Shown: positions 37,019-62,800 of the stretch, piece by piece
Layout: each line of letters opens with the position of its first letter
Numbering within the stretch: the stretch's first letter is position 1
Source: Macrostomum lignano
Taxonomy: Eukaryota
Direction of reading: 5' to 3'
DNA: 64,000 nt
NCBI GenBank assembly: GCA_002269645.1
Contig: NIVC01000393.1
Span: forward strand, 248,001-312,000
Notes under the pieces: generated by a model
What the model was told of the DNA's origin: nothing
Database searches by the model: none
The model's input: only the letters and a program-made list of their open reading frames with translations
Made by a program: the position numbers and the translations under genes

Positions 37019-37828
37019 GACAAACACTGTCCGATACTTGGAAATTATTGCACTAAATAAAGCTCCTGATCGATGATTCAATTAACTAATTGGCACTTGA
37101 CTTTTATCATGTAGCTTCAAGCTTTCTTGATTTGATGAATCCCACAATTTTGCTGTGTCATTTATACCCACCCACCCGTCCATCCACCCCACCCCACCCC
37201 ACTTTGTTTTTTGCTTTCATGTTTATCCTTTATTGCTACGAGTATAAGCTAATCCGCAAGCTACGTTGGTGAATAGAATCCCAACCAAGCACCAAATCCC
37301 AATCATTTGAATTCTTGCTCTTATGGTCTGATTTCTATAAAAATATCAGCACGATTATTATTGACACTTGTTGTAAGCTCAAGCCACGAGTGAAGCAGAT
37401 GCAAATTGACAGCCCATTGTTCGTAGCTTCTTTTCTCGCGCAGAGGCTTGTCCCCAGCAGCCCAGTGGGACAGCTCCATCGCCCGGGGCAACGCGGAATG
37501 TCTGGCTAGAACTTTTCCGTCAATATGTGATTGTAGGCTGTTTCCTACAGGCAACTCCGAGACTGGCAGCAGAAATTCAAAGGCTTTCTGGAAAGGAAAG
37601 CACTTCGTAGAACACATTGAGCGTTTTTGGGAGTGGTTGAGAGCCAATGGGCTTAGTGAGCTGTGTGGTTAGTAGAGTGCGGGAGTCTGTACATTCGCGG
37701 TGAATTGAGTAGCACCTGCAGATGACTTTCCCTTCTCCATTGGCTGGGCCATGCTTCTAGTCCATATTTTATGCGCTTCTGAAGCCAAAGTATGGTAAAA
37801 CAGGCTCGCTTTTTGTTGCACTTTCAGA

Positions 37829-38535: not shown

Positions 38536-38876
38536 TCACGCCGTCAGATCCGCTTTCTTTCCATTGTCCTTTTTCAAGTCGTAGGCGGTGATAACATCCG
38601 GCATGGCTTTCTGTACGTACATCATCGGGTCGCGAGGTCCGTCGAGCAGGAAGTGTGTTGTGAGGTGACCAACGCCCTTAACAGTGATGGAGCCCCTGGT
38701 CTCAAAGCTGTAGCCTCTCTGTTCCAGGCCTTCCCGCACGGTTCCCGTCACCTGTATGCGATCTTGAAGTCCGCTGCTCTCCATTCTTGAAGCGATGTTG
38801 ACCGTGTCGCCCCAGATGTCGTACTGGGGCTTGCGCGTGGCGATCACTCCGGCGATTACCACGCCGTGGTTCACTC
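38536..38876 (-). CDS. Adenylate cyclase exon 12 (end of C2a)
   Basis: [36 protein letters not shown]. Confidence 0.92.
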
Positions 38877-41800: not shown

Positions 41801-44800
41801 CGATCGGTGGTGAAGGCCACAGCGCAGGCGAACAGCGTGGATAAGGTGACGAACGAGAACAGGTAAATTGGCACCATGGTCATCGAGCTGGAATGAGCGC
41901 GAGTAAATTGGTGAAAAGCATCTCATAAAACCAGCCTAAATGCTGGATTGTTTGCATTTGATTGGCATTGGGAAATGACAATAAGGGGAAAAAGGCTGAG
42001 TTGAGCTATCGACACTTCAGGATTCAAGTCGGGTGCTCTGCAAAGTTTGCAATACGCACTTTATGAGTCTCATTTAGAATAGAGAGCAGGGCTCGTAACA
42101 GTTAAAAAATTTATGGTCAAGTGAGAGACTTGGAAACTTTTTCAGTCTGTCTCTGGGGATGATGAGCAGCTTTGATGAGCAGGTTGGTCCAAATTTGATG
42201 GCACTGTTGCCAAAACTAGAAATTCACTCGCTTTAATAGTTCAATATTAGTCCGCACCTCGAATCCACCGCCAGTCTGCATACCCTCAACCTGTCTACCA
42301 ATATGTGTTCCTATCTACCAATCTGTGTTCCTATCTACCAATCTGTGTTCCTATCTACCAATCTGTGTCCCTATCTACCAATCTGTGTTCCTATCTACCA
42401 ATCTGTGTCCCTATCTACCAATCTGTGTCCCTATCTACCAATCTGTGTTCCTATCTACCAATATGTGTCCCTATCTACCAATCTGTGTTCCTATCTACCA
42501 ATCTGTGTCCCTATCTACCAATCTGTGTCCCTATCTACCAATCTGTGTTCCTATCTACCCTATTTAGCTCCCTATCTACCAATGTCTTCTTACCAACCTA
42601 TAGCAATCTGCCTCCCTATCTAGTACACATTAATCCACAATCAATTATCTATCTCCAACTATACCCACACCGAACTTACCTTCGCTGAGTCAGAATTTGA
42701 ACGCAAAACGTGCCAGTGAGAAAGGCCAGCAGAAGACAGCTGACTTCAATGGAGAAGTAGGGATCTCTCACGGTGCCGAACTGCAGATAGAAAGTTGCAG
42801 CGAAATGAAAAAATATATAAAGATGGTTTTTTTGTTTTTTTTTAGAGGCAGGGGGGTTGTGTGCACCCTGGCGCACTTTAAGCGACATTGTCACACAACC
42901 GGCAAGAAGGCATTACTGCCCAATTCCGCCGACTCCCCTGAGCAGGCACACAAGCGCGCGGATACGTACGCAGGCACACACTCACACAGGAGTGTACAGC
43001 GGCCCTAACTTTATATTATCGTTAGGCATGTACACTTCACTGCGCCTTGGAGGGTTGGCTCTCAAGGCCGTTAATTGCACGAGCAGAGCCAAGCCGAGAT
43101 TCCAATTCAGCCCCAAATTAATGTGACTGCACTTGGAATCGAGCCTGGGCCGCTGACACACCAGAGCAGCTGCGCTACCGCTGGGCTACGGCCCCCCCCC
43201 CCTATAATATAAAGATGGTTAGGCTGTAACTATGAAGTTGACCCAGCTTATAATCCAAATTTTAACTCACGCAGTGGGCAATAGTCTGACCCAGACTGTG
43301 ACCCAGACTGTGACCAGACTGTGACCCAGACTGTGACCCGACTGTGACTCAGACTGTGACTCAGTCTGTGACCAAGACTGTGACTTAGACTGTGACCTAG
43401 ACTGTGACCTAGACTGTGACCTAGTCTGTCAACCAGCCTGTGACCCAGCCTGTGACCCAGACTGTGACCCAAACTGTGACCCAAACTGTGACCCAGACTA
43501 TGGCTTTTATCAACAATAATCCTGATAGAATTTTTCCCGACCTTCTTTTCCAGCCGGGGAAGCTTGAAACGCAGGTTGACGGGGTGGCAGTGCTCCTGGT
43601 ACAAGCTGTCGATGGAATGAGACTGGATTGCCGAGCTCAACGCTTCGTTGATTACGTCATCATTGACGCTTCGAGTTCGGTTGCCGTGATCGTCGACTCC
43701 CATTCTAGTGGGGATGATTTAGAGTAGAGTAAAGTCGAGAAGAGTAGAATAGAGTAGAGTATAGAGTAGAGTAGAATAGAGTAGTATATAGTAGATTAGA
43801 GTAGAGTAGAGTCGAGTCGAGAAGAGTAGAATAGAGTAGAGTAGAGAGTAGAGTAGAGCAGAATAGAGTCGACTAGAGTAGACTAGAGTAAATTTGAGTA
43901 GATTAGAGAAGAGTAGACTAGACTAGAGTAGAGTAGAGTAGAGTAGAGAAGAGTAGATTAGAATTGAGTAGAGAAGAGTAGAGTAGAATTGAGAAGAGAA
44001 GAGTAGAGTAGAATTGAGAAGAGAAGAGTAGAGTAGAATTGAGAAGAGAAGAGTAGAGTAGAATTGAGAAGAGAAGAGTAGAATAGAATTGAATAGAGAA
44101 GAGTAGAGTAGATTGGAGAAGAAACAAGCAGAGTAGAGCAGAGAGTAGAATAGACAGTAGCAAAGCACCAATGAAACCAGGTGGTATGCAAAAGCAAAAC
44201 TGACCCAGCCACCTTTTATGAATGTGAGATGCCGGCCGCCTTCCCTGACCAGCAGGTTCTGCTGCATCGCCGCAGTGCTGAGGCTGCTGCTGCTGGTCAG
44301 CCGGCACCACCAGAAAAGTTTTCACCCGATGCTCTCTTAGATAAGCGTGCCGGCTTTCACCTTCGCCGTCCTCAAAGCTGTAATCTCCGCCGAGGCTGTC
44401 GCGGGTCACCTCGGTGATGTGCACCCGGCCAGGCCGACCGCTGGACTCCAGGATCTCCGCCAGGTAGACGTCGCCCGACCAGACGTCGAACTGCAGTTTG
44501 TCGCGGCCGAGAACTCCGCAGATCACCGTGCCGGTGTGAATACCGATTCTCATGTCCACCGGGGCGTTGGTCATCACGCGGACTAGTCTGCCGATATGTA
44601 TCGATAATAGAATTAAAGCCCAGCAGATTTTTTAAAATATGCCGATACGTATCGAAGTTAAAATAAAATCCTGTCTATTATACATGGCCTATCTTATATA
44701 AATGTTCCCGTACATAGATAGGGTTTGCCTATTAGGAGCCTTAGCCCTGCGGTCTAGCGCGGCGCTCTGATGTACCAGCGGCCCAGGCTCGATTCCCAGT

Positions 44801-47800
44801 GCAGCCACACATTAATTTGGAGCTAAATTGGAATCTCGGCTTGGCTCTGCTCGGGCAATTAACGCCCTTGAGAGCCAACCCCCCCCCCCAGGCGCAGTGA
44901 AGTGTACATGCTTAATGATAAATAAAGTTAGGGCCGCTGTACACTCCTGTGTGAGTGTGTGCCTGTGCGTATGACTGCGTACGTATCCGCGAGCTTGTGT
45001 GCCTGCTCAGGGGAGTCGGCGGAATGGGCAGCAATGCCTCTCGCCGGTTGTGCGACAATGTCGCTTAAAGTGCGCCTAAAGTCCAGTTTAGGAGTTTAGG
45101 AGTTTTACCGATATGTATCGAAAGTCAATTTAAATTACACGTTCAATATGTATCGAAGATTGAGTGGGAAAAGCACTCATTTTAAATCAGACCCGATATG
45201 TATCAAAACTGAGCTCACTCATAAATCATTTTCAAGCTCGTACTCGTATTTTAATAAGTAGTGAGCATAAACTGACACTTTAAAATTTTATTAGCCCGCC
45301 CGGGGAGTCATATTTTATCGATGATGAGGAGCTGCTCCACAGTCCAATAAATTATGCTGGAGTTCGGCCTGAAGCCGGGCTGCCGTCCGAAATTCGGGAC
45401 TTCCGCTGCTGAATTTGGGCCGTCACTGCCCAGGATTTGGACCGCAAAAGCATGTACACTCTGAGCCATGTTGGCTGGCCTTCATGGGTGTAAATTGCAG
45501 GACACCCCCAAGCACCAAACGAACACGTTTACGCACAAAATCCAACCAAGGGCCGTGTGGTGCGAGTGTCAGAAATAAATTTTCAAGCTCATGAAACTCT
45601 AAGCTTGTGAAAGTCGCACGAAAAAAATCTGTGCACAGGTACTAAATTTTAATAATCTTAATTATTAAACGTTTGAGGCCCACTCACGATATGGTGGAGA
45701 TCATGTCCAAGCCCATTTCAACGCAGCACTTGGCGTGGTCGGCCCTGGGTTCCGGCAGTCCGGACACGCAGTAGTAGCAGTCACCCAGCAGCTTGATCCG
45801 CAGGCAGTTGTTGCTTTCAGCCAGCTGGTCAAATCTGGCAAACAGAACGTTGAGCAGCCGGACAATGAACTCCGGGTCGTTCTGACGACACAGCGTGGTG
45901 AAACCGCAGATGTCCGCAAACAGAATGCTGGAAATGCCGAGTCATCTTGGTTCAATTCTGTGCATTCAAATAACTAAGCATTGATTAGTTAACGAGCCAA
46001 CACGACACACTGTAGCACTGACACACAGTTCTCATTCATGGTCATTGTGACACGAGGCGAAGTCGGAATTTTGCAGGAAATGTGAAGAGGCCATCAAGAT
46101 AAGTCGAGTGCTTAGGTCGAAAAGTGCATAAGTACCTCTCTGGGATTTTAGAGATGCCAACAGCCTTGAGAGCTGAAAAGTGGCTGCTTAAGGATTAAGA
46201 AGTTCTTAATGACGACAGGTAAAAGTCTCAGTCAGAGCCGGCTACGGCCTGTTGACCTGAGTTTGAGGGAGTTATTCGCACTGCATAGTCTCTGCAATTC
46301 CGCCCTTGTCTTGCCTCATCCTCTTTAGGCTCTTCTTCTCCGTCTAAAGCTGTCTGTTTTCCCTTCGTGACTCCGACTTTGAATTTTCATTTCCAGCATC
46401 TTTGCTCGTCCCCTCCTGTTCCTCGTTCAGCCTCCACCAGAGATTAAAATAGCCTGCATTATACCTGTAAACCAGGCATGCAGCTACACCTGTTAAAGTC
46501 AACGAATCAAAAAACAGCCCGACCTAGCTTGTGAAATGCAAACATGCAGCTACTGTATGCATGAAGTAGAAAGTTCCACTTTAACTATTTTATATTTGTA
46601 CGAATTCTTTTTGGCTACCAGTTTAGAAGATGTTTAATCTAGTAGGTAAAGTTGGTATAGTAAGCCTCAGCATTAGCTTCAGAAGTTGCTAAAATCAAAA
46701 TTAGATTGTATCTTACTTAAGTACGAAAGGTACTTAAATATACTTCAGTATTATTCATTTTTCGCACTCAGTAATGCGTAAAAAAACAAAATTTAGATGT
46801 ACACTAGCAATCTACGCCCCCGTTGGGGAGCCAAAGAAATGCAATACACGTTTTTTTAATAAGCTACATGTATCCTTGAAATCTTAAAAAATCTCCTGTC
46901 AAACCTTGTAAGCCTTGACATGTCAGTAATTCCCCTCACAAGCTTTAACATATCAACTTCCCCCCTTGACATCTCAGCAATGCCCCCAATAAGCCTTGAA
47001 AATCTAAAAATATCTGTCAACCTTCTAACCCTAACCCTAGCCTAACCCTAACCTTAGCCTAACCCTAACCCCAACCCTAACCCTAACCTTAACCCTAACC
47101 TAGCCCTAACCCTAACCTAACCCTAAAGCATTGACATTTCAGTAATTCTCTCTAAGAGTCGTTATAGTACTACTACAGCATTATAGCGATTCCCTGCAAG
47201 CCTCGACATCGTAGGGATTCCCAAATGAATCTCTTAACTTCGACATGAAGCATTTTTTATTTTTTACATTACGCTTTTTTTATTAGCTATCCCTCCGCTG
47301 AGGAGGGACGAAATTCAGATGTACATTTGGCCTTCGCGGGGACGAAATTCAGATGTACATTTAGCCTTCGCGGGGGGACGAAATTCAGATGTACATTTAG
47401 CCTTCGCGGGGGGACGAAATTCAGATGTACATTTAGCCTTCACGGGGCGGGGCGAAATTCAGATGTACATTTGGCCTTCGCGTGGGGGGACGAAATTGTA
47501 TATACCAAGAAATTAATTAATTAAACAAAAACATTAAAAACAAAACACGTCTTAGAAACCGAATGTTGCTACTCACCTAACATTTTCATGTCTCTGTATG
47601 TAAACTTTGTTAAACATCGATCTGTGCGCTGGATTCTTCTCGGGATGTAGCAGCGGAGACGCCACGTACTCCGGCAGAAGCGACAGTATCAAACGGTCCT
47701 TGGGTAAATCAGTTTGTTAATTTTACTATCACATTTTACACAGAAGAATGTTAAAATCATCACTTTTTACTCCTCTTGACTGAGCGGTGCTGTTTATCCC

Positions 47801-50594
47801 GAATCGATTTGAGGATCTGTGGTGACCACTAGGAATGATTCGAAAGTTGCTACGCAAGAAAACCATTGAAGAAAAAGTAATTAATTCCCTTTGGTTTTTG
47901 CAGGGCTTCTCGTGTGGGGGAAAAGTATCAGCAAGAAATCATTGAGTAGAATAGACTCACTTCGGTTGCCTGGATACTTTAAGCTCTGGACCTCAACTTC
48001 GATCTTATTGTGGCCAATGTGACAGCAGACCCTAATGCATTCGCTCTCATTTCCTTTGAGTTTATAAGGCTTCCTGTTTTGGTTTTTATCTTATGGATTT
48101 TGTGCTTGTTAGTCTCATCAAAATGAAATATTCGCAGGCCTTCACTTCCCGCCATTTCTCTTTGCAGAATTTCCTTAGCCGGCGCTCACCAGCTTCTCCA
48201 TTTCCAGCTTGGCGCGCAGTCCGGCTTCGTAGTAGCGCCTGGTTTCCAGGAAAGTCTGCCGGCGGCCCATCTCCACGGGGCCGTGCACGAAAACGCCCAC
48301 TATGTTGGCGGCGAGCAAGTAGAACGCGTTGGCCGCAAGCTGCATGCAAGGGCAATGGGGGTTCCAATGTACACCAGCCAGCTGCTAAGGGGTGAATAAT
48401 TAAAAAAAATATTGGCCATGCCACTTGGGGGTGGGAGTTTAATGTACATTGGCCAGCCTATAGGGGGGGAGTGGGAGTTCAATGTACATAAGCTAGCCAC
48501 TGGGGGGATGGGAGTTCAATGTACATTGGCCAGTCGCTGGGGGATGGGAGTTCAATGTATATTGGCCAGTCACTGGGGGATAGGAGTTCAATGTACATAA
48601 GCTAGCCACTGGGGGGATAGGAGTTAAATGTACATTGGCCAGCCGCTATAAGAAAGGAAATTTAAAGTAAATTATCCAGGGTATGGCAAATTGTTGTACC
48701 GATTAGCCAATCAATCTGTCAATGCGAGTTACGTGATTCAATATTACGGAAACTAAAGGTCGATATGACGATATCAGAACAGAAAAGTGACAAAAAAGCT
48801 TTTATCACACACAAAAATCTTGACTACCAGCTCGGTCACGAATGTGATTTCTAATCCGTGTTCTCTAATGCGGGAGAATTAAGGAACCAGTTTGAGAGCT
48901 TAATCTCTACAGAAAGCTTGCTAGATCCGATCCAAAAGAATGCAGAAATGTTCTGTCTACCTTCAGCCTGCGAGCGTCAGTCGATGTGACTGACTCGGGG
49001 ACGGGGTGGACTCCGCCCCCCCATCCCAGAGGCATGAGAGGCAGGACTTCTCACAGCTGAGTGCGCAGGCGAGTGGACGACAGGCCTTTTTCCCGTGATC
49101 TTGTCGGGCCTAATTAGAGCGAGGCGGCCGTCAGGGTGTGAAAACGGGAGAATGTGGAGCAAAGATAAGATGCCGCTCGCTCCATTCAGCTGCTCAGTTC
49201 CTACTGGCACTGATACATTTTCTGACGTGACCTCCAACCAATAAAAGCTGCATTTTCGTGCAAGGTTCTTTGGCTTGGGCTGACATCGCGTTTAAAAAGC
49301 AGTGAGCTGTTTACGCTTGAGCAGCCATCAATTTGAGAACGGTCGCCCGCGTGTCCGGTGGATATTCAGGTGGGGGCGAAGTGACCTCGGATGACCTTTT
49401 AGTGCTTAATTTTGGGAGAAAATCACACGCTCTTCTAATTGCACTCAAACGTGGACTGTTGATAAATTACCCGTTTACTCTGACTACAACCCGGGTGTAG
49501 CGGCCAAAATCCCAAGATTTCGACGTTACCCTAATTTATTAAATTAAATCGGGATTCGGGCAGACAAGATGATTTATTTGCTGCTGAGCCATCGAGTGTC
49601 TCTGAAATCTGGTTGAAAAGCAATGAGCCTACTCGCAGAATTGCTACAAACTGTAGCGATGGCGAAGATGCTGGTTCAAGCGAGAGACGCCACCCCACTC
49701 CAGCTCGCGTACCCGAGCACCGAAATCCGGTCGGTTCATTCCAGAAATTCTAGACAACAGGTGCAGCATCATGATGAGGCCGCAGCAGGCCAGCAGGCTG
49801 CGAACACGCAACGGCAAGAACAGGTAGGCGATGACCGTCATCAGCGAGCTGGTGAACAGCCCGCTGCTCGGCTTCCAGCACAGCGGATCCGGCTCCTCGC
49901 CGATGCGAATGACGCTGGCGCCCTGCAGCAGCAGGAAGCAGATAGCCAGTCCGTAGCTCAGGTGCTGCTGCCGGGCCAGGCCGACCCGACAGCGCAGCAT
50001 GCCGATCAGGAGACCGCTGAAGCCGGCGAAGGCGACAGTGGAGAGGCTCAGGTGCAGCAGGGTGTTCTCAGATGGACCGCGGGCCGTCTGCGGCAACTGC
50101 GTGACGGCGGAACCGGCGCTCAGAAGCGTCAGCGTTGCCACCAGAACGAGCAGGGAGCGATGGTTCAGCCGGCGAAAGTACATCTGGTAGAGCTGCTCAA
50201 GCTCGGCGCCTGGGAACACCTTGGAAGAAAAGAGGCACTTGAACAGGATGGCCAGGAAGCGCCAACTTTCAGCGCAGTTCGCCGGCGGCTTGGTGTGCAG
50301 CAGGTCGCTGATTGTGTCCCGGTTCGGGTCCAGGCGCTGCAGGGCAGAGCTGTGCGACGATTCGGAGTCTCTGGGCCGAGTTCTCCATCGACCGCTGCTA
50401 CTGCCAACGTTGCCGCCGCCGCCGCTGCCACCAATTCTGACAATTTTCGTCGTTCTCTGAAGTCGCTGCCAGCCCGACGGGCGATCCGGGTTTCTTCGAA
50501 GCATTCGGGCGACTTCCTTCGGCGCCGATATTTGGTCGCCGTTGCCGACTGAAACTGGATCGGCGTCCACCATCGGGGCCGGGTGGACGCTCAT
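38536..50594 (-). CDS. ADCY: Transmembrane adenylate cyclase, 12 exons, 1158 aa. Exons: 50594-49713, 48339-48190, 47698-47577, 45927-45688, 44587-44213, 43704-43542, 42780-42680, 41887-41797, 41712-41620, 40867-40733, 40291-39508, 38876-38536
   Basis: Two TM clusters; C1 motifs [20 protein letters not shown] and MRIGIHTG; C2 motifs [12 protein letters not shown] and [16 protein letters not shown]. Exon lengths sum to 3477 nt in one frame. The start ATG is inferred. Confidence 0.93.
39213..39480. repeat. 25-bp minisatellite (AAACAGACACAACTGACACAATACC)
   Basis: About 10 units; exact reverse complement of the array at 40400-40580. Confidence 0.9.
39508..40291 (-). CDS. Adenylate cyclase exon 11 (last TM helices and first half of C2a)
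   Basis: cttccag acceptor, G|gtgagt donor; [24 protein letters not shown]. Confidence 0.92.
40400..40580. repeat. 25-bp minisatellite (GGTATTGTGTCAGTTGTGTCTGTTT)
   Basis: About 6 units. Confidence 0.9.
40733..40867 (-). CDS. Adenylate cyclase exon 10 (extracellular loop)
   Basis: 135 nt, phase 0 at both ends, GAG|gtgaga donor. Confidence 0.75.
41211..41485 (+). mobile_element. SINE family A copy
   Basis: Homologous to 33513-33800. Confidence 0.8.
41620..41712 (-). CDS. Adenylate cyclase exon 9 (TM)
   Basis: 93 nt, [34 protein letters not shown]|gtaaca donor. Confidence 0.75.
41797..41887 (-). CDS. Adenylate cyclase exon 8 (TM)
   Basis: Hydrophobic segment, ATG|gtgagt donor. Confidence 0.8.
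42295..42600. repeat. 20-bp minisatellite (CTATCTACCAATCTGTGTTC)
   Basis: Direct reading. Confidence 0.9.
42680..42780 (-). CDS. Adenylate cyclase exon 7 (TM7)
   Basis: ctgcag acceptor, AG|gtaagt donor. Confidence 0.8.
42871..43200 (-). mobile_element. tRNA-derived SINE family B, minus-strand copy
   Basis: Reverse complement of 44735-45076 and 58169-58481. Confidence 0.8.
43275..43500. repeat. 12-bp minisatellite (CCCAGACTGTGA)
   Basis: Direct reading. Confidence 0.9.
43542..43704 (-). CDS. Adenylate cyclase exon 6 (C1b)
   Basis: Phases match neighbours; ...[12 protein letters not shown]. Confidence 0.85.
43730..44150. repeat. (GAGTA)n-type pentanucleotide satellite
   Basis: Direct reading. 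Confidence 0.9.
44213..44587 (-). CDS. Adenylate cyclase exon 5 (second half of C1a)
   Basis: [18 protein letters not shown]...FDVWSGDV...[12 protein letters not shown]. Confidence 0.92.
44735..45076 (+). mobile_element. tRNA-derived SINE family B copy
   Basis: Head ...GCGGTCTAGCG...GGCTCGATTCCC; three copies in the window. Confidence 0.8.
45688..45927 (-). CDS. Adenylate cyclase exon 4 (first half of C1a)
   Basis: [10 protein letters not shown]...[16 protein letters not shown]...[13 protein letters not shown]. Confidence 0.92.
46810..47300 (-). mobile_element. Second copy of the TTAGGG-bearing dispersed repeat, with (CCCTAA)n at about 47025-47125
   Basis: Reverse complement of 27770-28095. 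Confidence 0.7.
47305..47495. repeat. 37-38-bp tandem repeat (GGGACGAAATTCAGATGTACATTTAGCCTTCGCGGG)
   Basis: About 5 units. Confidence 0.85.
47577..47698 (-). CDS. Adenylate cyclase exon 3
   Basis: DRLILSLLP...[13 protein letters not shown]; AG|gtgagt donor. Confidence 0.9.
48190..48339 (-). CDS. Adenylate cyclase exon 2 (TM6 and helical linker)
   Basis: [15 protein letters not shown]...RQTFLETR; 150 nt. Confidence 0.9.
48345..48640. repeat. About 36-bp degenerate tandem repeat (GGGGATGGGAGTTCAATGTACATTGGCCAGTCGCT)
   Basis: Direct reading. Confidence 0.8.
49713..50594 (-). CDS. Adenylate cyclase exon 1 (N-terminus, TM1-5)
   Basis: [16 protein letters not shown] pattern followed by hydrophobic helices; CGG|gtacgc donor. 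Confidence 0.85.
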
Positions 50595-52006
50595 TGCCGT
50601 CCTCAGGATGAAGTTTCTGTGGCTTCTGAGTGCTGATTTAATTGGATCCTGCAGCAACATAGAAATGGAATAGTTTTGTTGGTGCTCTACAGGTATTAGC
50701 GGGTTACCGTGTTCAGCAACGACGCAAAAAAGGTCTGTGTTGTCACAAAATATAAGCAGCATCCTAGGGCAAACGTGGTGTGTGTTCAAAAGTACTCAAA
50801 GTACTTATAAAGGTCATTCAAACCAAAAATCAGTTAAAAAGTCACAAGGAAGACCTCAATCTTGTCTAGAAGGTCATCTTCCTTCACGGATCAAGAATCA
50901 TGCAGACACACAGACAGGCATAACCAATTCTGTATATTTCAGGTAGGGACGGTTAACGGTATTCAAATGGGAATACCTACTAATTTTCAAACGTTGTAGC
51001 TGGAACCTTGAATCAGACTTGGCTTTGCTGCCGCTCCCGAACTCGAAGAGCTCTTTCTTCTTTTGCCATGCAACTCGGGCAGATGGAGAGCTGTTTAAAT
51101 AGCCGTTAAAGCCTCCAGCTTCGATTAAATGCATTGGTGCAATGCTGCCGCCCCGGCTCGGCTGTTTGCTCACCAGAGTTGATAAGGAAGCAGAGTCGGA
51201 CTTGAGCAAGTGAAGCAACAGTTGAGGCCGAACTAAGATTTCGTATGAGATTTGATAATAAAGAGAACACGTGTGTTTCTGAGATTCTGGGCCACCCACA
51301 TCCTTAGGCTTATTCTACTCGTACTCCCGTAGACGTGCCGCATCGATATGAATTTTGTCAGGCCCAGCTTCCCAGCTGCATCACACATTGGAGTAGTGCT
51401 TCAGACTCGATAGGCAACAGTCTGACTGAGGTTGGACTTAGCATAAATCCCGAGCTGATACCGCTGGGCCTTCGAACTCAGACTTTATGAAGTCTTTTCC
51501 CGTGAAACATAAGTCAACTCTGGTTGAGCAAGCATGAGATAAGAGCACAAATCTGCTGAGGCAAAATGTCAGGCATCGTGGTGTGACGGAAACTCTTTTT
51601 CTCGGAAGCTTATCTGTCACTGAAATTCGAAAGACAGCGAAAATTTCGCTTACAGTGTTGATGAAGCGGGATTCTGTGTGGGGTATGAAAGAAAAGCACA
51701 GAAATGCAATTGAAAATTTTATGCATGCGGGCTTCGCACATTCAAAAATCAATTTCGATGATTGCGGTGAAGTCATCGCCACAATCAGTCATTTTGCCTG
51801 TGGTTTATTGTCATCTCGTTTAACGGTTACTCAGATTGCTGAATAAGTAGTAGAAATTATTTATTAAAGCTGCTTGCAAATGACTTTATTGACCATTTTG
51901 GCAAGTAAAATAGTCAATTTTCACTTGAATCTCAAATAGATGACAAGTTTGCTTTCTTTAAGTGATCGTGTTGTCAGTTGGTCATTCATTTCTGGATCCT
52001 TGGCTG

Positions 52007-53489
52007 TCACTCCGAACGCTTTTTTAGGATATCCCGGTCCAGCATGAAGTCGGGGTACCTGGTGAACCGTTTCTTCAGAATGCCCCGGTCCAGCATGAAG
52101 TCGGGGTACCTGGTGAAGCGCTTCTTCAGAATGCCCCGGTCCAGCATGAAGTCGGGGTACCTGGTGAACCGTTTCTTCAGAATGCCCCGGTCCAGCATGA
52201 AGTCGGGGTACCTGGTGAAGCGTTTCTTCAGAATGCCCCGGTCCAGCATGAAGTCGGGGTACCTGGTGAAGCGCTTCTTCAGAATGCCACGGTCCAACAT
52301 GAAGTCGGGGTACCTGGTGAACCGTTTCTTCAGAATGCCCCGGTCCAGCATGAAGTCGGGGTACCTGGTGAAGCGTTTCTTCAGAATGCCCCGGTCCAGC
52401 ATGAAGTCGGGGTACCTGGTGAAGCGCTTCTTCAGAATGCCACGGTCCAACATGAAGTCGGGGTACCTGGTGAACCGCTTATCAAGGTGCTTGATGCCGT
52501 CGTCCTGGTGAACGTTCTTCGTATCATCATGGTGCTTCTCTGCACCAGTTACATCCAATCTGCAAGGGAGAATGCAAAACTTCAGAATTAGACCACATGT
52601 AGCTGAAGGTCAAGCAAGTCCAGTTGCATTCAGTGCCAGTATTTTCTTCAAGGGGCCACCTTATCACGAGCTAAACTTAATAAAAATGTAATCAAATCCG
52701 TCTCTGCGACCCTGGGCGTCTGTCTCTTGTCACGGAATTTTGTGTTACTACGCAGGCCAAAAGCTCCTCAGACATCTCAAGAGCTCTTCTGGTAAAAAGA
52801 GACCTTGGGCTTCTCAGTTTAGACCACAGACGCCCCTATTTATTCCAGATTATGTAAGCCCAATGATTAAAAGTTTATATACATTTTACAGTCCACTGGG
52901 ACTGCAGGTGATCTCTTGTCAGCGTGTGTCCCATCCCAAATCTTGGGTTTCAGATCTGAAGTCGCATAGGAAAGACTAATGCATTGAGAAGCTCTACAAT
53001 GAAAGCTCAAAGGCCAGAGGTGTCAACTCAGAATTTCGCTATCCGTTCAAGAATTCGTGTTCTATCCGCTTTCCTAGTTTTGAATTGGGTCCTCGCAGCA
53101 AGAGGCGGTCTGTTGTTAGACCAAAAATGTGTTGTAGCCTAGTGGTTAGAGAGGGGTTCGATTCTCAACCTACTTAAAAAATTGTATCCTTAAGCATGAA
53201 ATTTAATTCTGCATTGCTTCACTACACCCAGCTGTAAAATGGGTGCCAGCATTAGCTGGGGTAATTGAGGGTAAGTGTGGGGACCCCCAGTCCTTGGACT
53301 GAACAGCCGTACGCAGCCTTCAGATGCTTCAGAGCTGTCGGCTGCACATTTTCCCATTATGGCAGGTGTAATGAAAAATACAAATTTTAAGACGTGTCAT
53401 TTAAACTATTTAGCTAGGCAGATAGTTACTACAGGAACTCACACCACGGCGCCGAGCAGGACTATCGACAGAATCAATGGCGATCGCAT
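52007..53489 (-). CDS. Secreted neuropeptide-type precursor, 199 aa, exons 53489-53443 and 52559-52007, with 9 copies of FTRYPDFMLDR(G/D)IL
   Basis: Signal peptide MRSPLILSIVLLGAVVLDVTGA assembled across a phase-2 intron; KR/KKR sites; synonymous variation between repeats; AATAAA about 140 nt after the stop. Confidence 0.85.
53129..53371 (+). mobile_element. SINE family A, degenerate copy in the intron of the neuropeptide-type gene
   Basis: CCCAGCTGTAAAATGGGTGCCAGCATTAGCTGGGG shared with the other copies. Confidence 0.7.
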
Positions 53490-54014
53490 GGCAAAGCACT
53501 TTCTATAGTCAGAAGCGGAGCCTCTTCAGAAAGTTCCTTTCAGAAAGAGGGTCTTTTTAATTGTTGAGAGACTCTATCGCTGGGAAGCAGATGGCTCGGT
53601 AATGAAGACAAATGCGCTTGGAATAAAGGAAAAAGTTTTTATGCCAGCGACTCGGCTCTCTGGGCTAGAATGCGCCGTTATAAAGGGAAGCGTCACTGGG
53701 AACTCGCGCGCCTCCACACTCCCCGTCCCCTGCAGCAGTCGCAGCCATCGCATCCGCGCCTTCTCTCATCTTCCCAACCTTCCATTGGCTGCTGGGCCTC
53801 CTTGCCATTTTCCTATGCCTTTGCGGGAAAGAAATTGAGAAGCGTTTGAAGGATCGCCCGGTCTAAAGATGATTAATTGACAGGGTCAGAAAAGTGACTT
53901 CATACTGGCCATCTTAATTTAAGAATTGAGGGATGACCTGAAAGCGTATTGAAACTCAAAATTTGAAACTTAAAAAGTTAAGCGATTGGCATTAGCGCTG
54001 CGGTGGGATTTTAA

Positions 54015-56110
54015 CCCTCAGGTGGCAGAGGTGGGATGTGAACCCTCGGGTGGCAGAGGTGAGATGTGAACTCTCGGGTGGCAGAGGTGGGATGTGAACC
54101 CTCGGGTGGCAGAGGTGGGATGTGAGCCCTCGGGTGGCAGAGGTGGGATGTGAACTCTCGGGTGGCAGAGGTACATGTATGATGTGAACCCCCAGGTGGC
54201 AGAGGTGGGATGTGAACCCTCAGGTGGCAGAGGTGGGATGTGAACCCTCGGGTGGCAGAGGTGGGATGTGAACCCTCGGGTGGCAGAGGTGGGATGTGAA
54301 CCCTCGGGTGGCAGAGGTGAGATGTGAACTCTCGGGTGGCAGAGGTATGATGTGAGCCCTCGGGTGGCAGAGGTGGGATGTGAACTCTCGGGTGGCAGAG
54401 GTACATGTATGATGTGAACCCCCAGGTGGCAGAGGTGGGATGTGAACCCTCAGGTGGCAGAGGTGGGATGTGAACCCTCAGGAGGCAGCGGTGGGATGTG
54501 AACGCTCGGGTGGCAGAGGTGGGATGTGAACCCTCGGGTGGCAGAGGTGGGATGTGAACCCTCGGGTGGCAGAGGTGGGATGTGAACCCTCGGGTGGCAG
54601 AGGTGAGATGTGAACTCTCGGGTGGCAGAGGTATGATGTGAACCCTCGGGTGGCAGAGGTGGGATGTGAACTCTCGGGTGGCAGAGGTGGGATGTGAACT
54701 CTCGGGTGGCAGAGGTGGGATGTGAACTCTCGGGTGGCAGAGGTATGATGTGAACCCTCGGGTGGCAGCGGTGGGATGCGAACCCTCGGGTGGCAGAGGT
54801 GGGATGTGAACCCTCGGGTGGCAGAGGTGGGATGTGAACTCTCAGGTGGCAGAGGTGGGATGTGACCTCTCAGGTGGCAGAGGTGGGATGTGAACCCTCA
54901 GGTGGCAGCGGTGGGATGTGAACTCTCGGGTGGCAGAGGTGGGATGTGAACCCTCGGGTGGCAGCGGTGGGATGCGAACCCTCGGGTGGCAGCGGTGGGA
55001 TGCGAACCCTCGGGTGGCAGCGGTGGGATGCGAACCCTCGGTGGCAGAGGTGGGATGTGAACCCTCGGGTGGCAGCGGTGGGATGCGAACCCTCGGGTGG
55101 CAGCGGTGGGATGCGAACCCTCGGGTGGCAGCGGTGGGATGCGAACCCTCGGGTGGCAGAGGTGGGATGTGAACCCTCGGGTGGCAGCGGTGGGATGCGA
55201 ACCCTCGGGTGGCAGCGGTGGGATGCGAACCCTCGGGTGGCAGCGGTGGGATGCGAACCCTCGGGTGGCAGAGGTGGGATGTGAACCCTCGGGTGGCAGA
55301 GGTGGGATGTGAACTCTCAGGTGGAAGCGGTGGGATGTGAACTCTCAGGTGGCAGAGGTGGGATGTGAACCCTCAGGTGGCAGCGGTGGGATGTGAACTC
55401 TCGGGTGGCAGAGGTACATGTATGATGTGAACCCTCGGGTGGCAGCGGTGGGATGCGAACCCTCGGGTGGCAGAGGTGGGATGTGAACCCTCGGGTGGCA
55501 GCGGTGGGATGCGAACCCTCGGGTGGCAGCGGTGGGATGCGAACCCTCGGGTGGCAGCGGTGGGATGTGAACCCTCGGGTGGCAGCGGTGGGATGTGAAC
55601 TCTCGGGTGGCAGAGGTACATGTATGATGTGAACCCTCGGGTGGCAGAGGTGGGATGTGAACCCTCAGGTGGCAGAGGTGGGATGTGAACCCTCGGGTGG
55701 CAGAGGTGGGATGTGAACCCTCAGGTGGCAGCGGTGGGATGTGAACCCTCGGGTGGCAGCGGTACATGTATGATGTGAACTCTCGGGTGGCAGAGGTGGG
55801 ATGTGAACTCTCGGGTGGCAGAGGTGGGATGTGAACCCTCGGGTGGCAGAGGTGGGATGTGAACTCTCGGTGGCAGAGGTGGGATGTGAACCCTCGGGTG
55901 GCAGAGGTGGGATGTGAACTCTCGGGTGGCAGAGGTGGGATGTGAACCCTCGGGTGGCAGAGGTGGGATGTGAACTCTCGGGTGGCAGAGGTGGGATGTG
56001 AACCCTCGGGTGGCAGAGGTGGGATGTGAACTCTCGGGTGGCAGAGGTGGGATGTGAACCCTCGGTGGCAGCGGTGGGATGTGAACCCTCGGGTGGCAGC
56101 GGTGGGATGT
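54015..56110. repeat. 28-bp minisatellite (GGGTGGCAGAGGTGGGATGTGAACCCTC)
   Basis: About 74 units. Confidence 0.95.
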
Positions 56111-57324
56111 GAGTCTTCAACCTTTATTCAAGATCGTCTCAAATTCAGAAGCCACATAACATTCACTTACTTCTCGGCACCTCGATAATATGCTGAAAAT
56201 ATTTTTCCCACCCCTCCCCACAAAACAAGTGCACCCACTGAAACTGAAAATAATTGATTTGGCTAGAGAAATCAATCACTTTATTGTGGGTGGCAGTGAT
56301 GTATCTATTTTATTCCCTTCAATTCTCTCTCTCTCTACTTGTAATCCCGACCCTTTTTCCCCCAGTTTCCTTCTATATCGTTTCTCCTTCCAGCATCTAT
56401 CGCGAAACAGATGAAGCGAGCGGGCATAAACTGCCTGGATATTTCAGCTCGCACAGACAGGCAGGAGATCCCAGAACAATCCCTGTTCCCCCGACCCCAA
56501 TTGCACTATTTGATCAGCAAGGGGGAGGCAGCACACGGCTTGCTCTCTTTATCAGCCCCTGCTCGCGCTAATTGAGTTATAAGCGGACAAGAATGATGCA
56601 GGGAGTTGAGCTCTTGTCTGACCCTGTCAGGACTGAGGCAATTTAAATCCGGGCCCTGAGAGCCCAGAGCCAGGTTTAAAGTTTCTCGCTCCTGTGTGAT
56701 GACTTTTTCGACTAAAAACTTGCTTAAAAAGCTCATCGGCTAAACTTGTTCCGGACTTGTTACTGTAGGGGAGACTTTCTGAGTTTGTTAGAGTTCTCTC
56801 ATAGCTGCAAGCTCGCAAAAAAAGGTTATTAAAGTTTCAAGTGAACTTTTGCAACACTGTCCCGATGGGGCGTGGATAATCTGAGATTATTCAGACCTAG
56901 CGCACAAAAATCCATCATCCAAACCAGACACCGATAGCGGTGTTTGCAGTTGAAATATTGTGTCAATATGTACGTTTAATTAAGCAAATCGAAAGGTTTC
57001 ACCTGATTGGTCTGATAATTTATGGCGTCCGCGTTCTCATTTGAAAAACAAGTTTGACTGATCGGTCGGTCTGACTATTTTGAGCTGAACTGAGAAATTC
57101 GAACAATTTTATTTTTTTGCATTTCTCCCACAGCCAGCGGTAAGGCAGATCCGCCCCGTTCTGCTGACTCCCGAACACGCGCTCACGCAGGGTGTACCGG
57201 TACAGCTGCCCTGACTTTATTAATCATCAGGCATGTAAACTTGGAGGTACACCTTGGATGTTGGCCCTCATGAGTATGAATCGTACGACAAGACTGACCA
57301 ACTTAGATGAGTCCGCTCATGGAG

Positions 57325-59858: not shown

Positions 59859-62800
59859 CTAGGCCAGACTGAAGTGCAGCTGCGTATTTGCCGGCAGCGC
59901 GGCCCGGGCGCTAAGAACCGCGTGCGGTGACACGCTGCAGCCCAGCAGGTTGAGGTAGACTAGATTCGGGCATCCGTTGGTTGCTAAGGCCGACAGGCCC
60001 TGTTGAAACGGAACCAAAATAACAATTTTAACATTGGTGAATATTCGTGAAGGTACCGAGATATTCACGCAATCGCATTGCAACTCTCACCTAATCCAAC
60101 TCTCAACCACCTGATCCGTGACGCAATCGCATTGCAACTCTCATTTGATCCATGACGCAATCGCATTGCAACTCTCATTTGATCCATGACGCAATCGCAT
60201 TGCAACTCTCATTTGATCCATGACGCAATCGCATTGCAACTCTCACCCACCTGATCCATGACGCAATCGCATTGCAACTCTCACCCACCTTATCTATGAC
60301 GCAATCGCATTGCAACTCTCACCTAATCCAACTCTCAACCACCTGATCCGTGACGCAATCGCATTGCAACTCTCACCTGATCCATGACGCAATCGCATTG
60401 CAACTCTCACCCACCTGATCCATGACGCAATCGCATTGCAACTCTCACCTACCTGATCCGTGACGCAGTCGCATTGCAACTCTCACCCACCTGATCCGTG
60501 ACGCAATCGCATTGCAACTCTCACCTGATCCATGACGCAATCGCATTGCAACTCTCACCCACCTGATCCGTGACGCAATCGCATTGCAACTCTCACCCAC
60601 CTGATCCATTATGCAATCGCATTGCAACTCTCACCCACCTGATCCGTGACGCAATCGCATTGCAACTCTCACCCACCTGATCCGTGACGCAATCGCATTG
60701 CAACTCTCACCCACCTGATCCGTGACGCAATCGCATTGCAACTCTCACCCACCTTATCCATTACGCAATCGCATTGCAACTCTCACCCACCTGATCCATT
60801 ACGCAATCGCATTGCAACTCTCACCCACCTGATCCATTACGCAATCGCATTGCAACTCTCACCCACCTGATCCGTGACGCAGTCGCATCCGCGAAGGCTC
60901 AGTCGGGTGAGTCTGGCTGAGCAGCCGCCGGCGCTGGCCAGTGCAGAGACGGCGTCATCCGTGACGTCGCAGCCGCCGAAGTCCAGCTCCAGCGGCGGCC
61001 CGGCCGGCCCGAGTCCGCGAGAGAGCCGCTCGACGCCCAAATCGGTGACGCGTCGGCAATCGCGGAGGCTCAGCTGCCGCAGGTTGGTCGCTCGGATCGC
61101 GATGTGAAAGAGGACTTCGTCGTTGATCTGAGAGCGATTGGTTACGGTTGGCATCTTGCATCGTTAAAACTTGATGTATATTGAAGTTTGATTGCAAAGT
61201 GTTCTCAAACTAATTTGCGCTGAAACTCTTAGGTTTTATAAATAAAGTTCGATTTAAAAGACTGTAGTCTTAGCTCGTGTTCTGTTTTGGTAGATGATTT
61301 TATCGGCTCTCCCAGTCTCTGGCCAGACCCCTCTAGGTGGAAGGTCCGCTAGACGCGAGCAGAAAGGTGGGTCTGCTGTTTCCATACCCGCGGAGAATAT
61401 GACAATGAAGCCTCCATATCCTGTACAGCGACGTTCAGCCAAAGTATGACGTCGATATCCATCGATTTAATGTAAAAGTACACGTCTGTCAGCGACGTTG
61501 CTATGCTAGACGTGTGCAGTCATTCACTCCAAGGTTCAGTGACTGGTGGACTCCCTGAAGGCTGGGTGCAGCGAATCAGACGCACGCACACACAACACAG
61601 CACACAACAGCAGGGCAAGCAATGAGGACTTACACCCTCGCAGCGGACCAGAGCCAGACTTCGCAGCCTTCGTCCGCACCGTCGCAGCAGCCGCTCCAAG
61701 CCGATTTCGCTGATCTCACGGCCGCTGTCGGCAAGCCGGAGCTCGCGGAGGCCGGGGCAGCCGCCGCCGGAGCCCAGCGCCGCCAGGCCGCTGTCGGTAA
61801 CATTCGGGCAGCGGCGCAGGCAAAGGCGGCTGAGGCGCGGGCACATTCCATCGCCGAGGGCGCGCAGGCCAGAGTCGTCGACGCCGCGACAGTCGGCAAC
61901 TTCGAGGCTGATAAGACGCGGCGCCGTCACCGGCAGGGCCAGGGTGACGCCGTGACAGGCCGCCAAGCGCAGATGGCGAAGGCGCTGGCAGCCGTGGAGC
62001 AGCTCGCGGGCGCCGAGCGCTGTCAGGCGCGGACAGGCGCGAAACGCGGCTCGCTGGAGACGCGGGCACCGGGAGCCAAGCAAGCTGAGCGCCCTGTCGG
62101 TCAGGGTGATGGAATTCGCCACGCTGACTCGAAGCAGGCCCAAGCAGTGCGGGTAGCTGGCGTAGCTGAGAATCTTCGTCACGCTGTCGATGGCCGCGTT
62201 GGCATCCAGGCGAGGATCGTGCAGCTCCAGGCCGGTCCACAGAGCCGGGTGCCAGGCGAGGCGGTACCAGGAGCGGCAGACGGCGGCGCAGCGGCACAGC
62301 TGAGGCGAGTCCAGGTAGCTGAAAGCCAGCAGGAGGACTCGGTCTGGCAGCTGCGGCTGCGCTGGCTCCTTCCGCTGCTGTTCCCGGAGCCAGCGCATGC
62401 ACTTTCCCGACGGGTTCAGCGCTGTCGCTTGGCAGTCCTTGACGTTCGCCTGTGGCTCTGCTCATGACATATGGTTTGGCAACTTTTTTGTTACTTTGTA
62501 GCTATTAAAAGAATTCCTTATAAAATTTACTAAAAGCATAAGTGAGACTTGTCAAAATCAAGGGAGCTGAAGTACGTACCTAAGCTTATACTGCCTAATT
62601 GCATTTTCATGATTTAACTCCTACCCTTCAAGTGACTAGATAAGACGGGCGCTAGTCAGTCGGGTGATGTATATCTATTGTGGTCCTGAATGTACGATGA
62701 ATACCTACAACCACCAAGAAAGCTTTTGTGTGGCTGTTTGTGCATTTATCGTATCACTTATCTGAATAGTTTGAGAATGGAGTCAGTTGAGGGCAACAGA

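What the first reader, a model, noticed from the sequence alone, without database searches (positions are those of the whole stretch)
52007..53489. Unrecognised multi-copy neuropeptide precursor: 9 x FTRYPDFMLDRGIL
Seen in the sequence: a 47-nt exon (MRSPLILSIVLLGAV + GT|gtgagt) joins in phase to cccttgcag|A-TTG-GAT..., giving signal peptide, a short acidic/His spacer, nine 17-aa units separated by KR/KKR, then SE-stop. The differences between the 51-bp units are synonymous in this frame (CTG/TTG, CGG/CGT/CGC, AAA/AAG, ATT/ATC, CTG/CTA), except one G-to-D change in the last copy. That is the pattern expected from selection on the peptide rather than a drifting satellite. Established knowledge: signal peptide plus repeated dibasic-flanked units is the prohormone-convertase precursor layout, and the lack of Gly before KR predicts a non-amidated peptide. 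Inference: I cannot assign a family; the hydrophobic ends and D..LDRG recall pedal peptide/orcokinin only weakly. The ORF track misses the signal exon, so automatic annotation could discard this locus as a repeat.
Basis: partly seen in the sequence, partly recalled or inferred. Interest (0 to 1): 0.85.

Follow-up and report, generated by a model that had tools for sequence, protein, structure and literature searches.

The report
Flatworm multi-copy secreted peptide precursor
This is a real two-exon gene of the flatworm Macrostomum lignano that most likely encodes a secreted precursor cut into nine copies of a 14-residue peptide; it is already in GenBank as a truncated 'hypothetical protein', so it is a useful but fairly ordinary addition to flatworm neuropeptide catalogues.

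Summary
On the minus strand, a 47-nt exon (53489-53443) joins through a GTGAGT...TTGCAG intron of 883 nt to 52559-52007. The product is 199 aa: a signal peptide, an acidic/His spacer, then 8 x FTRYPDFMLDRGIL and 1 x FTRYPDFMLDRDIL, each followed by KKR. Nine of ten variant states among the 51-bp units are synonymous in this frame (P about 1.6e-4). Other arrays in this repeat-rich window reach only 0.2-0.56. The window is Macrostomum lignano contig NIVC01000393.1. The gene is already annotated from RNA evidence as hypothetical protein BOX15_Mlig001732g5 (PAA83947.1). That model has the same splice and the same stop but only 4 units, and a 255-nt GT..AG gap inside the array explains the difference. 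Searches of 5.8 and 1.84 billion proteins found no homologue, and no held paper contains the peptide. Its closest relatives are the planarian pedal-peptide-like prohormones PPP-1 and PPP-2, which rank first among mass-spectrometry-confirmed planarian peptides (shuffle P 0.02-0.05). However, it lacks the IGxG core of the pedal peptide/orcokinin family, so membership is unproven. Verdict: a real, probably peptidergic precursor and a new member of a known kind. Neuronal expression and processing are untested.

The parts
53443..53489 (-). Exon 1, coding part (47 nt): ATG plus most of the signal peptide (MRSPLILSIVLLGAV + GT)
   Evidence: It is the only ATG-started hydrophobic mini-exon with an in-phase GT donor in the 3.9 kb upstream of exon 2, and an in-frame TGA lies 39 nt upstream at 53526-53528. 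GenBank PAA83947.1 has the same N-terminus.
52560..53442 (-). Intron, 883 nt, GTGAGT...CTCCCTTGCAG, phase 2
   Evidence: GC is 0.44 against 0.55 in exon 2. The junction is reproduced in the transcript-derived GenBank product.
52007..52559 (-). Exon 2, coding part (553 nt including the TGA stop): end of the signal peptide, the spacer, nine peptide units and SE-stop
52475..52540 (-). Acidic/His-rich spacer propeptide EKHHDDTKNVHQDDGIKHLD followed by the first dibasic site KR
   Evidence: Predicted signal cleavage is VTGA|EKHH.
52016..52474 (-). Nine in-register 51-bp units, each encoding FTRYPDFMLDRGIL + KKR (unit 9: FTRYPDFMLDRDIL + KKR)
   Evidence: 9 of 10 variant states are synonymous; control arrays reach 0.2-0.56.
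52059..52466 (-). Zone in which four alternative canonical GT..AG gaps of 255 nt (52466-52212, 52415-52161, 52364-52110, 52313-52059) each turn the 199-aa product into the 114-aa GenBank product
   Evidence: Each unit contains CACCAG|GTACCC, so a spliced aligner can skip 5 units in frame.
51860..51890 (-). Two AATAAA polyadenylation signals, 117 and 142 nt after the stop
   Evidence: This is a sequence motif only; poly(A) site usage was not tested.
53637..53643 (-). TATA-like CATAAAA, 154 nt upstream of the ATG (possible core promoter)
   Evidence: Motif only; weak.

Best explanation
This is a small two-exon gene of Macrostomum lignano that encodes a 199-aa secreted preproprotein of the prohormone type.

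Shown:
- The gene structure.
- Transcript-based support for the splice.
- An N-terminal signal-peptide-like sequence.
- Nine identical-length units bounded by KR/KKR.
- Purifying selection on the peptide sequence.

Inferred mechanism:
- The signal peptide is removed after Ala22.
- In the regulated secretory pathway a PC2-type prohormone convertase cuts after KR44 and after each KKR. M. lignano has such a convertase, expressed across its neurons.
- A carboxypeptidase trims the basic residues.
- This releases eight copies of FTRYPDFMLDRGIL ([M+H]+ 1743.89) and one of FTRYPDFMLDRDIL (1801.89). No Gly precedes the basic site, so the C-termini are free rather than amidated.
- KKRFTR|Y forms an R-x-x-R site, so an 11-mer YPDFMLDRGIL (1339.67) is a possible alternative end product.
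- The peptide then acts as a neuropeptide or peptide hormone on an unidentified receptor.

Its closest relatives are the non-amidated, multi-copy pedal peptide/orcokinin-type peptides of planarians (PPP-1/PPP-2). It may be a very divergent member of that family or a lineage-specific family.
For: - Structure and phase of the splice.
- The same junction and stop in PAA83947.1, encoded at the identical 1,483-bp span.
- That annotation is purely RNA-derived: PMC5730564.
- Signal-peptide layout. The n-region is MRS and the h-region is PLILSIVLLGAVVL (9-residue Kyte-Doolittle windows score 2.4-3.3 for starts at residues 3-11). The c-region is DVTGA, with T at -3 and A at -1.
- 9 of 10 variant states synonymous only in this frame, P about 1.6e-4. 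Control arrays reach 0.2-0.56.
- GC3 of 0.82, against an intron GC of 0.44.
- A PC2 homologue exists in M. lignano, is nervous-system-expressed and is essential: PMC4490696 and PMC12435804.
- Planarian precursors with the same layout (short spacer, KR/KKR-flanked, non-amidated 11-12-mers) are confirmed by mass spectrometry: PMC2953531 Tables S2 and S5.
- The six best global matches of the 14-mer among about 47 planarian peptides are all PPP-1/PPP-2, with shuffle P 0.02-0.05.
- BLASTP against PPP-1 gives E = 0.005.
Against: - No expression pattern, peptidomic or receptor data could be obtained.
- SignalP was not available, so the signal peptide is judged from hydrophobicity and the -3/-1 rule only.
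- No orthologue was found in any other species, so conservation across species is unknown.
- The transcript-derived model has 4 units rather than 9, so the true copy number in the mRNA is uncertain.
- Similarity to PPP is weak. BLASTP against PPP-2 gives E = 1.7, and the IGxG core of the pedal peptide/orcokinin family (PMC4990251) is absent.
Confidence: 0.72

Rival explanations
1. The gene is real and secreted, but the product is not a neuropeptide. The KKR-flanked peptides would be made in a gland or epithelial cell by a furin/kexin-type protease and released to the outside, for example as a pheromone or a defensive, antimicrobial or mucus-associated peptide.
For: Nothing in the sequence specifies the cell type. 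Multi-copy dibasic-flanked precursors also occur outside nervous systems (general knowledge, for example yeast alpha-factor and amphibian skin peptides). KKRFTR contains a minimal furin motif R-x-x-R.
Against: - The peptide is near-neutral (pI 5.96) and not cationic or amphipathic like typical antimicrobial peptides.
- The layout and peptide length match mass-spectrometry-confirmed planarian neuro-prohormones.
- The best sequence matches are neuropeptides.
Confidence: 0.15
2. It is a secreted repetitive protein that is not cleaved at all. The 17-aa repeat would then be a structural module, and the KKR triplets simply part of it.
For: Processing has not been shown. The genome is extremely rich in tandem repeats, about 35% of this window.
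Against: - Perfect conservation of a 14-mer bounded by canonical KR/KKR.
- A short acidic spacer ending in KR, and a 2-residue tail after the last KKR. This is the standard prohormone architecture, not that of a structural repeat protein.
- No Pfam domain was found.
Confidence: 0.06
3. It is a non-coding 51-bp minisatellite that happens to be open in frame. The upstream 'exon' and the GenBank model would then be transcriptional or annotation noise.
For: There are 34 tandem arrays in the 64-kb window. Four of the six frames of the unit are open. The GenBank model disagrees with the genome on copy number.
Against: - Variation is synonymous only in one frame (P about 1.6e-4), unlike the control arrays.
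- There are no indels.
- Only one signal-peptide-like exon in 3.9 kb upstream fits in phase, and it has consensus GTGAGT/YAG splice sites.
- An RNA-derived gene model has the same junction.
Confidence: 0.04

Closest known systems
Schmidtea mediterranea pedal peptide prohormone-like PPP-1 and PPP-2 (Collins et al. 2010, PMC2953531; peptides RSFYDPIGGGLL, FRYFDKIGSDLL and others)
   Same: - Flatworm origin.
- A signal peptide followed by a short spacer ending in KR/KK.
- 5-8 tandem copies of a non-amidated 11-12-mer separated by KR/KRR/KKR.
- Shared residues F.RY.D near the N-terminus (PPP-2) and G[IL]L-COOH at the C-terminus (PPP-1).
- These are the top-ranked matches among mass-spectrometry-confirmed planarian peptides. 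BLASTP against PPP-1 gives E = 0.005.
   Different: - The M. lignano peptide is 14 aa, needs 2 gaps to align, and lacks the D-x-I-G core (it has PDFML / LDRG instead).
- BLASTP against PPP-2 is not significant.
- phmmer and word-based searches do not connect the two.
[quoted passage not shown]
   Same: - Multi-copy precursors.
- Peptides of about 12-20 residues, mostly non-amidated.
- An acidic residue after an N-terminal hydrophobic or aromatic residue, and a hydrophobic C-terminus.
- LDRG in the M. lignano unit resembles the oyster (F/L)DRLG motif.
   Different: The shared 'IGxG' core is absent: there is only one Gly, with no I/L before it. No statistically secure similarity was found. The receptor of the family had not been identified as of the 2018 review, so no receptor-based test is possible.
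P0008, an unnamed precursor from Logan assembly ERR550402 (organism unknown): 7 x MLDPIGxxLL separated by KKR/RKR
   Same: KKR spacers, non-amidated 10-mers, and the string MLD followed by G..L-KKR (compare FMLDRGILKKR).
   Different: P0008 has the canonical DPIG core and is clearly PPP-1-like (E = 6e-16 to PPP-1). Aligning it to the M. lignano unit needs a 3-residue gap and scores low.

Membership tests
Prohormone-convertase-processed multi-copy (neuro)peptide precursor (generic class) | N-terminal signal peptide | tested here: met
   n/h/c regions and the -3/-1 rule give cleavage VTGA|EKHH. SignalP itself was not available.
Prohormone-convertase-processed multi-copy (neuro)peptide precursor (generic class) | Repeated short peptide units each bounded by dibasic or tribasic sites | tested here: met
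   KR before unit 1 and KKR after each of the 9 units.
Prohormone-convertase-processed multi-copy (neuro)peptide precursor (generic class) | Selection acts on the peptide sequence, not on the DNA repeat | tested here: met
   9 of 10 variant states are synonymous in the coding frame only, P about 1.6e-4. Control arrays reach 0.2-0.56.
Prohormone-convertase-processed multi-copy (neuro)peptide precursor (generic class) | Transcribed and spliced as predicted | tested here: met
   Indirect. RNA-derived GenBank model PAA83947.1 at the identical span has the same junction. The reads themselves were not seen.
Prohormone-convertase-processed multi-copy (neuro)peptide precursor (generic class) | Expression in neurons or endocrine cells, and detection of the mature peptide | not testable with these tools
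   No expression or peptidomic data for M. lignano were reachable. PC2 is present and neural.
[quoted passage not shown] | Multiple copies of a non-amidated peptide of about 11-20 residues | tested here: met
   Nine 14-mers with no Gly before KKR.
[quoted passage not shown] | Core motif: hydrophobic-D/E-x-[IL]-G-x-G ('FDSIGxG', 'IGxG', '(F/L)DRLGSG') | tested here: not met
   The motif is as described in PMC4990251. The unit has LDRG and PDFM but no [IL]-G and no second G.
[quoted passage not shown] | Statistically supported sequence similarity to accepted members | tested here: inconclusive
   - BLASTP: PPP-1 E = 0.005, PPP-2 E = 1.7.
- PPP peptides rank 1-6 among planarian peptides, with shuffle P 0.02-0.05.
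- No link by phmmer against 1.84 billion proteins.
Non-coding minisatellite | Variation indifferent to reading frame; no gene context | tested here: not met

The most novel reading that the evidence does not exclude
FTRYPDFMLDRGIL would define a peptide-signalling family not yet described in any animal. It would be either a Macrostomum or macrostomorph-specific invention, or an extreme derivative of pedal peptide/orcokinin that has lost the IGxG core. It would have its own, still orphan, receptor in a genetically tractable flatworm.
Probability: 0.4. Interest if true: 0.45.

Novelty: new member of a known kind. Interest (0 to 1): 0.35.

Why it matters
- M. lignano is the one flatworm with routine transgenesis, and I found no catalogue of its neuropeptides in the papers I could search or read. 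A highly expressed-looking, nine-copy precursor with a short promoter-proximal region is a ready candidate for a peptidergic-neuron reporter, for RNAi, and for GPCR deorphanisation.
- If the peptide proves to be a derived pedal peptide/orcokinin type, it would extend the known sequence range of a family. That family's receptors had not been identified in any phylum as of the 2018 review (PMC5818035).
- There is also a practical annotation lesson. The public model (PAA83947.1 / A0A267GET4) under-counts the peptide copies, 4 instead of 9, because each unit contains CAG|GT and allows a false in-frame GT..AG junction. Other tandem-repeat precursors in short-read-based annotations may be truncated in the same way.

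Tried and rejected
- The search for homologous proteins with the 199-aa product found only the gene's own GenBank model.
- phmmer of the 114-aa model against 1.84 billion representatives gave 6 further hits. All were TPR proteins or translated simple repeats, so they were rejected as spurious.
- The search for homologous proteins with Smed-PPP-2 found nothing at E <= 10. With Smed-PPP-1 it found two unnamed pedal-peptide-like precursors from Logan assemblies plus one borderline hit (P0010, E = 9.9), but no M. lignano protein and not this gene.
- Pfam found only sub-threshold noise, HTH_45 at 21.8 bits against a cutoff of 25.5.
- Rfam and ARAGORN found nothing in the window.
- Literature searches for the peptide strings and for the gene ID returned 0 papers.
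- McVeigh 2009 and Koziol 2016, the two flatworm neuropeptide surveys most likely to list M. lignano precursors, are not held. A prior description there cannot be excluded.
- The organism behind ERR550402 could not be identified.
- 4-mer motif searches of the planarian prohormone supplement (LDRG, YPDF, RYPD, DFML, LDRS, IDRG) gave no hits.
- I considered and rejected real alternative splicing as the main reason for the 4-unit model. The internal GTACCC donor and the pyrimidine-poor acceptor are poor compared with the true GTGAGT/TTGCAG intron. It is not excluded.

Full report
**1. What is there**

- The ATG is at 53489.
- Exon 1 is 47 nt (53489-53443) and is followed by the donor GTGAGT.
- The 883-nt intron ends in CTCCCTTGCAG.
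- Exon 2 runs from 52559 to the TGA at 52009-52007.
- The join is in phase and gives 199 codons plus the stop.

The product is MRSPLILSIVLLGAVVLDVTGA-EKHHDDTKNVHQDDGIKHLD-KR, then nine 17-residue units, then SE. Eight units are FTRYPDFMLDRGIL+KKR and the last is FTRYPDFMLDRDIL+KKR.

TRF reports the array as period 51, 8.7 copies, 95% matches and 0% indels. The unit is found nine times in the window, all of them in this array, with none expected by chance.

An in-frame TGA lies 39 nt upstream of the ATG. A scan of the 3.9 kb upstream of exon 2 finds only one ATG-started, hydrophobic mini-exon that ends in an in-phase GT, and it is the proposed exon 1. AATAAA signals lie 117 and 142 nt after the stop.

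**2. Is it more than chance?**

This matters because the window is about 35% tandem repeat: 34 arrays with TRF score of at least 200, about 22.7 kb in total. Four of the six frames of the 51-bp unit are open, so an open frame alone means nothing.

The informative signal is the pattern of variation.

- Ten variant states occur at nine columns. Nine are synonymous in the coding frame, against 2, 1, 1, 6 and 1 in the other frames.
- If transitions and transversions are placed at random in the unit, the probability of nine or more synonymous changes is about 1.6e-4.
- The same test on other arrays in the window whose period is a multiple of 3 gives lower values. The three well-registered controls reach best-open-frame synonymous fractions of 0.20 (45-bp), 0.33 (21-bp) and 0.56 (18-bp).

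One caveat applies. Units 1-3 are identical to units 4-6, so part of the array is a recent 153-bp duplication and the variants are not all independent events.

**3. Where the window comes from, and transcript evidence**

The only database hit for the 199-aa product is 'hypothetical protein BOX15_Mlig001732g5 [Macrostomum lignano]' (P0001, 114 aa; PAA83947.1, UniProt A0A267GET4).

Its gene lies on NIVC01000393.1 of assembly GCA_002269645.1 and spans 1,483 bp. The fetched locus is base-identical to the reverse complement of the window, and the gene sits at 52007-53489. The window is therefore M. lignano, and the locus is already annotated.

According to Wudarski et al. 2017 (PMC5730564), that annotation was produced only from transcripts. 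The pipeline was STAR/StringTie/TACO, the de novo assembly MLRNA150904, TBONE boundaries and TransDecoder ORFs. The GenBank protein contains the exon 1/exon 2 junction (...LLGAVVLDVTGAEK...), so this counts as indirect RNA evidence for the predicted splice.

**4. Why GenBank has 114 aa and the genome 199**

The difference is 85 aa, which is five units or 255 nt. Every unit contains CACCAG|GTACCC. Four different canonical GT..AG gaps of 255 nt inside the array (52466-52212, 52415-52161, 52364-52110 and 52313-52059) each reproduce the 114-aa protein exactly.

The likely cause is repeat collapse or a false junction in short-read transcript reconstruction. The internal donor and acceptor are poor compared with the real intron. 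True alternative splicing is not excluded.

**5. Mechanism**

Shown:
- The N-terminus has a basic n-region (MRS) and a 14-residue hydrophobic core. Nine-residue Kyte-Doolittle windows score 2.4-3.3 for starts at residues 3-11.
- The c-region DVTGA fits the -3/-1 rule, with cleavage before E23.
- KR precedes unit 1 and KKR follows every unit. No Gly precedes the basic residues.

Established background:
- M. lignano has a PC2 homologue. It is expressed in the nervous system and is essential for post-embryonic development (PMC4490696).
- Its promoter drives expression throughout the neurons (PMC12435804).
- In the planarian S. mediterranea, precursors with the same architecture are processed into non-amidated peptides that have been seen by mass spectrometry (PMC2953531).

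Inferred:
- Signal peptidase, then PC2-type cleavage and carboxypeptidase trimming, release eight FTRYPDFMLDRGIL ([M+H]+ 1743.89) and one FTRYPDFMLDRDIL (1801.89).
- KKRFTR|Y is an R-x-x-R site, so an 11-mer YPDFMLDRGIL (1339.67) is a possible further product.
- The peptide then acts as a neuropeptide or hormone. No expression, peptidomic or receptor data were reachable.

**6. Comparison with known families**

Direct searches found no homologue.
- phmmer of the 114-aa model against 1.84 billion representatives returned only TPR proteins and translated simple repeats.
- Pfam gave only sub-threshold noise.

The planarian prohormone tables provided a fair test set. The 14-mer was aligned globally against 9 PPP-1/PPP-2 peptides and 38 other mass-spectrometry-confirmed or predicted planarian peptides.
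- At standard gap costs the six best scores are all PPP peptides. The best are YSYYDSIGSGLL and FRYFDKIGSDLL; the latter aligns as F-RYFD-KIGSDLL to FTRYPDFMLDRGIL.
- Shuffling the 14-mer gives P = 0.02-0.05, depending on gap costs.
- BLASTP of the precursors gives E = 0.005 against PPP-1 but 1.7 against PPP-2. The PPP-1 alignment leans heavily on G[IL]LK[KR]R.
- A search with PPP-1 found an unnamed precursor from a Logan assembly with 7 x MLDPIGxxLL/KKR. It shares MLD...G..L-KKR with the C-terminal half of the M. lignano unit.

The pedal peptide/orcokinin family is characterised by an 'IGxG' core, with variants such as FDSIGxG, LERIGSG and oyster (F/L)DRLGSG (PMC4990251). The M. lignano unit has LDRG, but it has no I/L before the Gly and no second Gly.

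I therefore treat PP/OK, and specifically planarian PPP-1/2, as the closest known family and as the best model for how the gene works. I do not file the gene as a member: one defining feature is not met, and the similarity statistics are only suggestive.

**7. Novelty and score**

No paper in the held library contains the peptide or the gene ID. However, the two surveys most likely to list it (McVeigh 2009, Koziol 2016) are not held.

The gene model is public but unnamed and truncated. Lineage-specific multi-copy precursors are common in flatworm neuropeptidomes; Collins et al. list 51 prohormone genes, many of them simply numbered 'spp'. So this is a new member of a known kind. It is useful for work on M. 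lignano, mildly interesting for PP/OK evolution, and not surprising to a specialist. Interest 0.35.

Noticed in passing
window 52059-52466 (GenBank PAA83947.1 / UniProt A0A267GET4): The public gene model for this locus has only 4 of the 9 peptide units. Each unit contains CAG|GT, so four in-frame canonical GT..AG gaps of 255 nt reproduce the shorter protein. Other tandem-repeat precursors in this transcript-based annotation may be truncated in the same way.
   Followed up: yes
window 1-64000: About 35% of the window (about 22.7 kb, 34 arrays with TRF score of at least 200) is micro- or minisatellite, with periods from 3 to 456 bp. Many arrays give long spurious ORFs in several frames.
   Followed up: partly
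window 54002-56112: A 28-bp minisatellite (GGTGGGATGTGAACCCTCGGGTGGCAGA, about 74 copies, with a 230-bp higher-order period) starts only about 0.5 kb upstream of the peptide gene's ATG. It therefore bounds the likely promoter region.
   Followed up: no
window 53131-53300 (+ strand, inside the intron): A tRNA-like fragment (GTAGCCTAGTGGTTAGAG...GGTTCGATTCTCAACC, D-arm joined to T-arm with no anticodon arm) is followed by SINE-body-like sequence. ARAGORN and Rfam do not call it. It is probably a decayed tRNA-derived SINE.
   Followed up: partly
window 38536-50789 (- strand): A multi-exon transmembrane adenylyl cyclase gene lies directly downstream of the peptide gene on the same strand. AC_N is at 49644-50789, and the Guanylate_cyc catalytic exons are at 43918-44577, 39353-40201 and 38536-38874.
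   Followed up: partly
window 35413-37081 (- strand): A piggyBac-type transposase (DDE_Tnp_1_7 plus zf-Tnp_2) is split across at least two ORFs (35845-36648 and 35413-35841). The frame is therefore interrupted, which suggests a decayed or intron-containing copy.
   Followed up: no
window 29143-30270 (+) and 61520-62398 (-): There is an uninterrupted 375-aa TLC-domain (TRAM/LAG1/CLN8) ORF and a 292-aa F-box ORF. Both are ordinary host genes.
   Followed up: no
L002 105-641 (Logan ERR550402) and L003 3001-3561 (Logan SRR16599576): These are two unnamed pedal-peptide-type precursors from unidentified organisms. One is 7 x MLDPIGxxLL/KKR. The other has 3 x DPIGGG[Y]LL peptides with long spacers.
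   Followed up: partly
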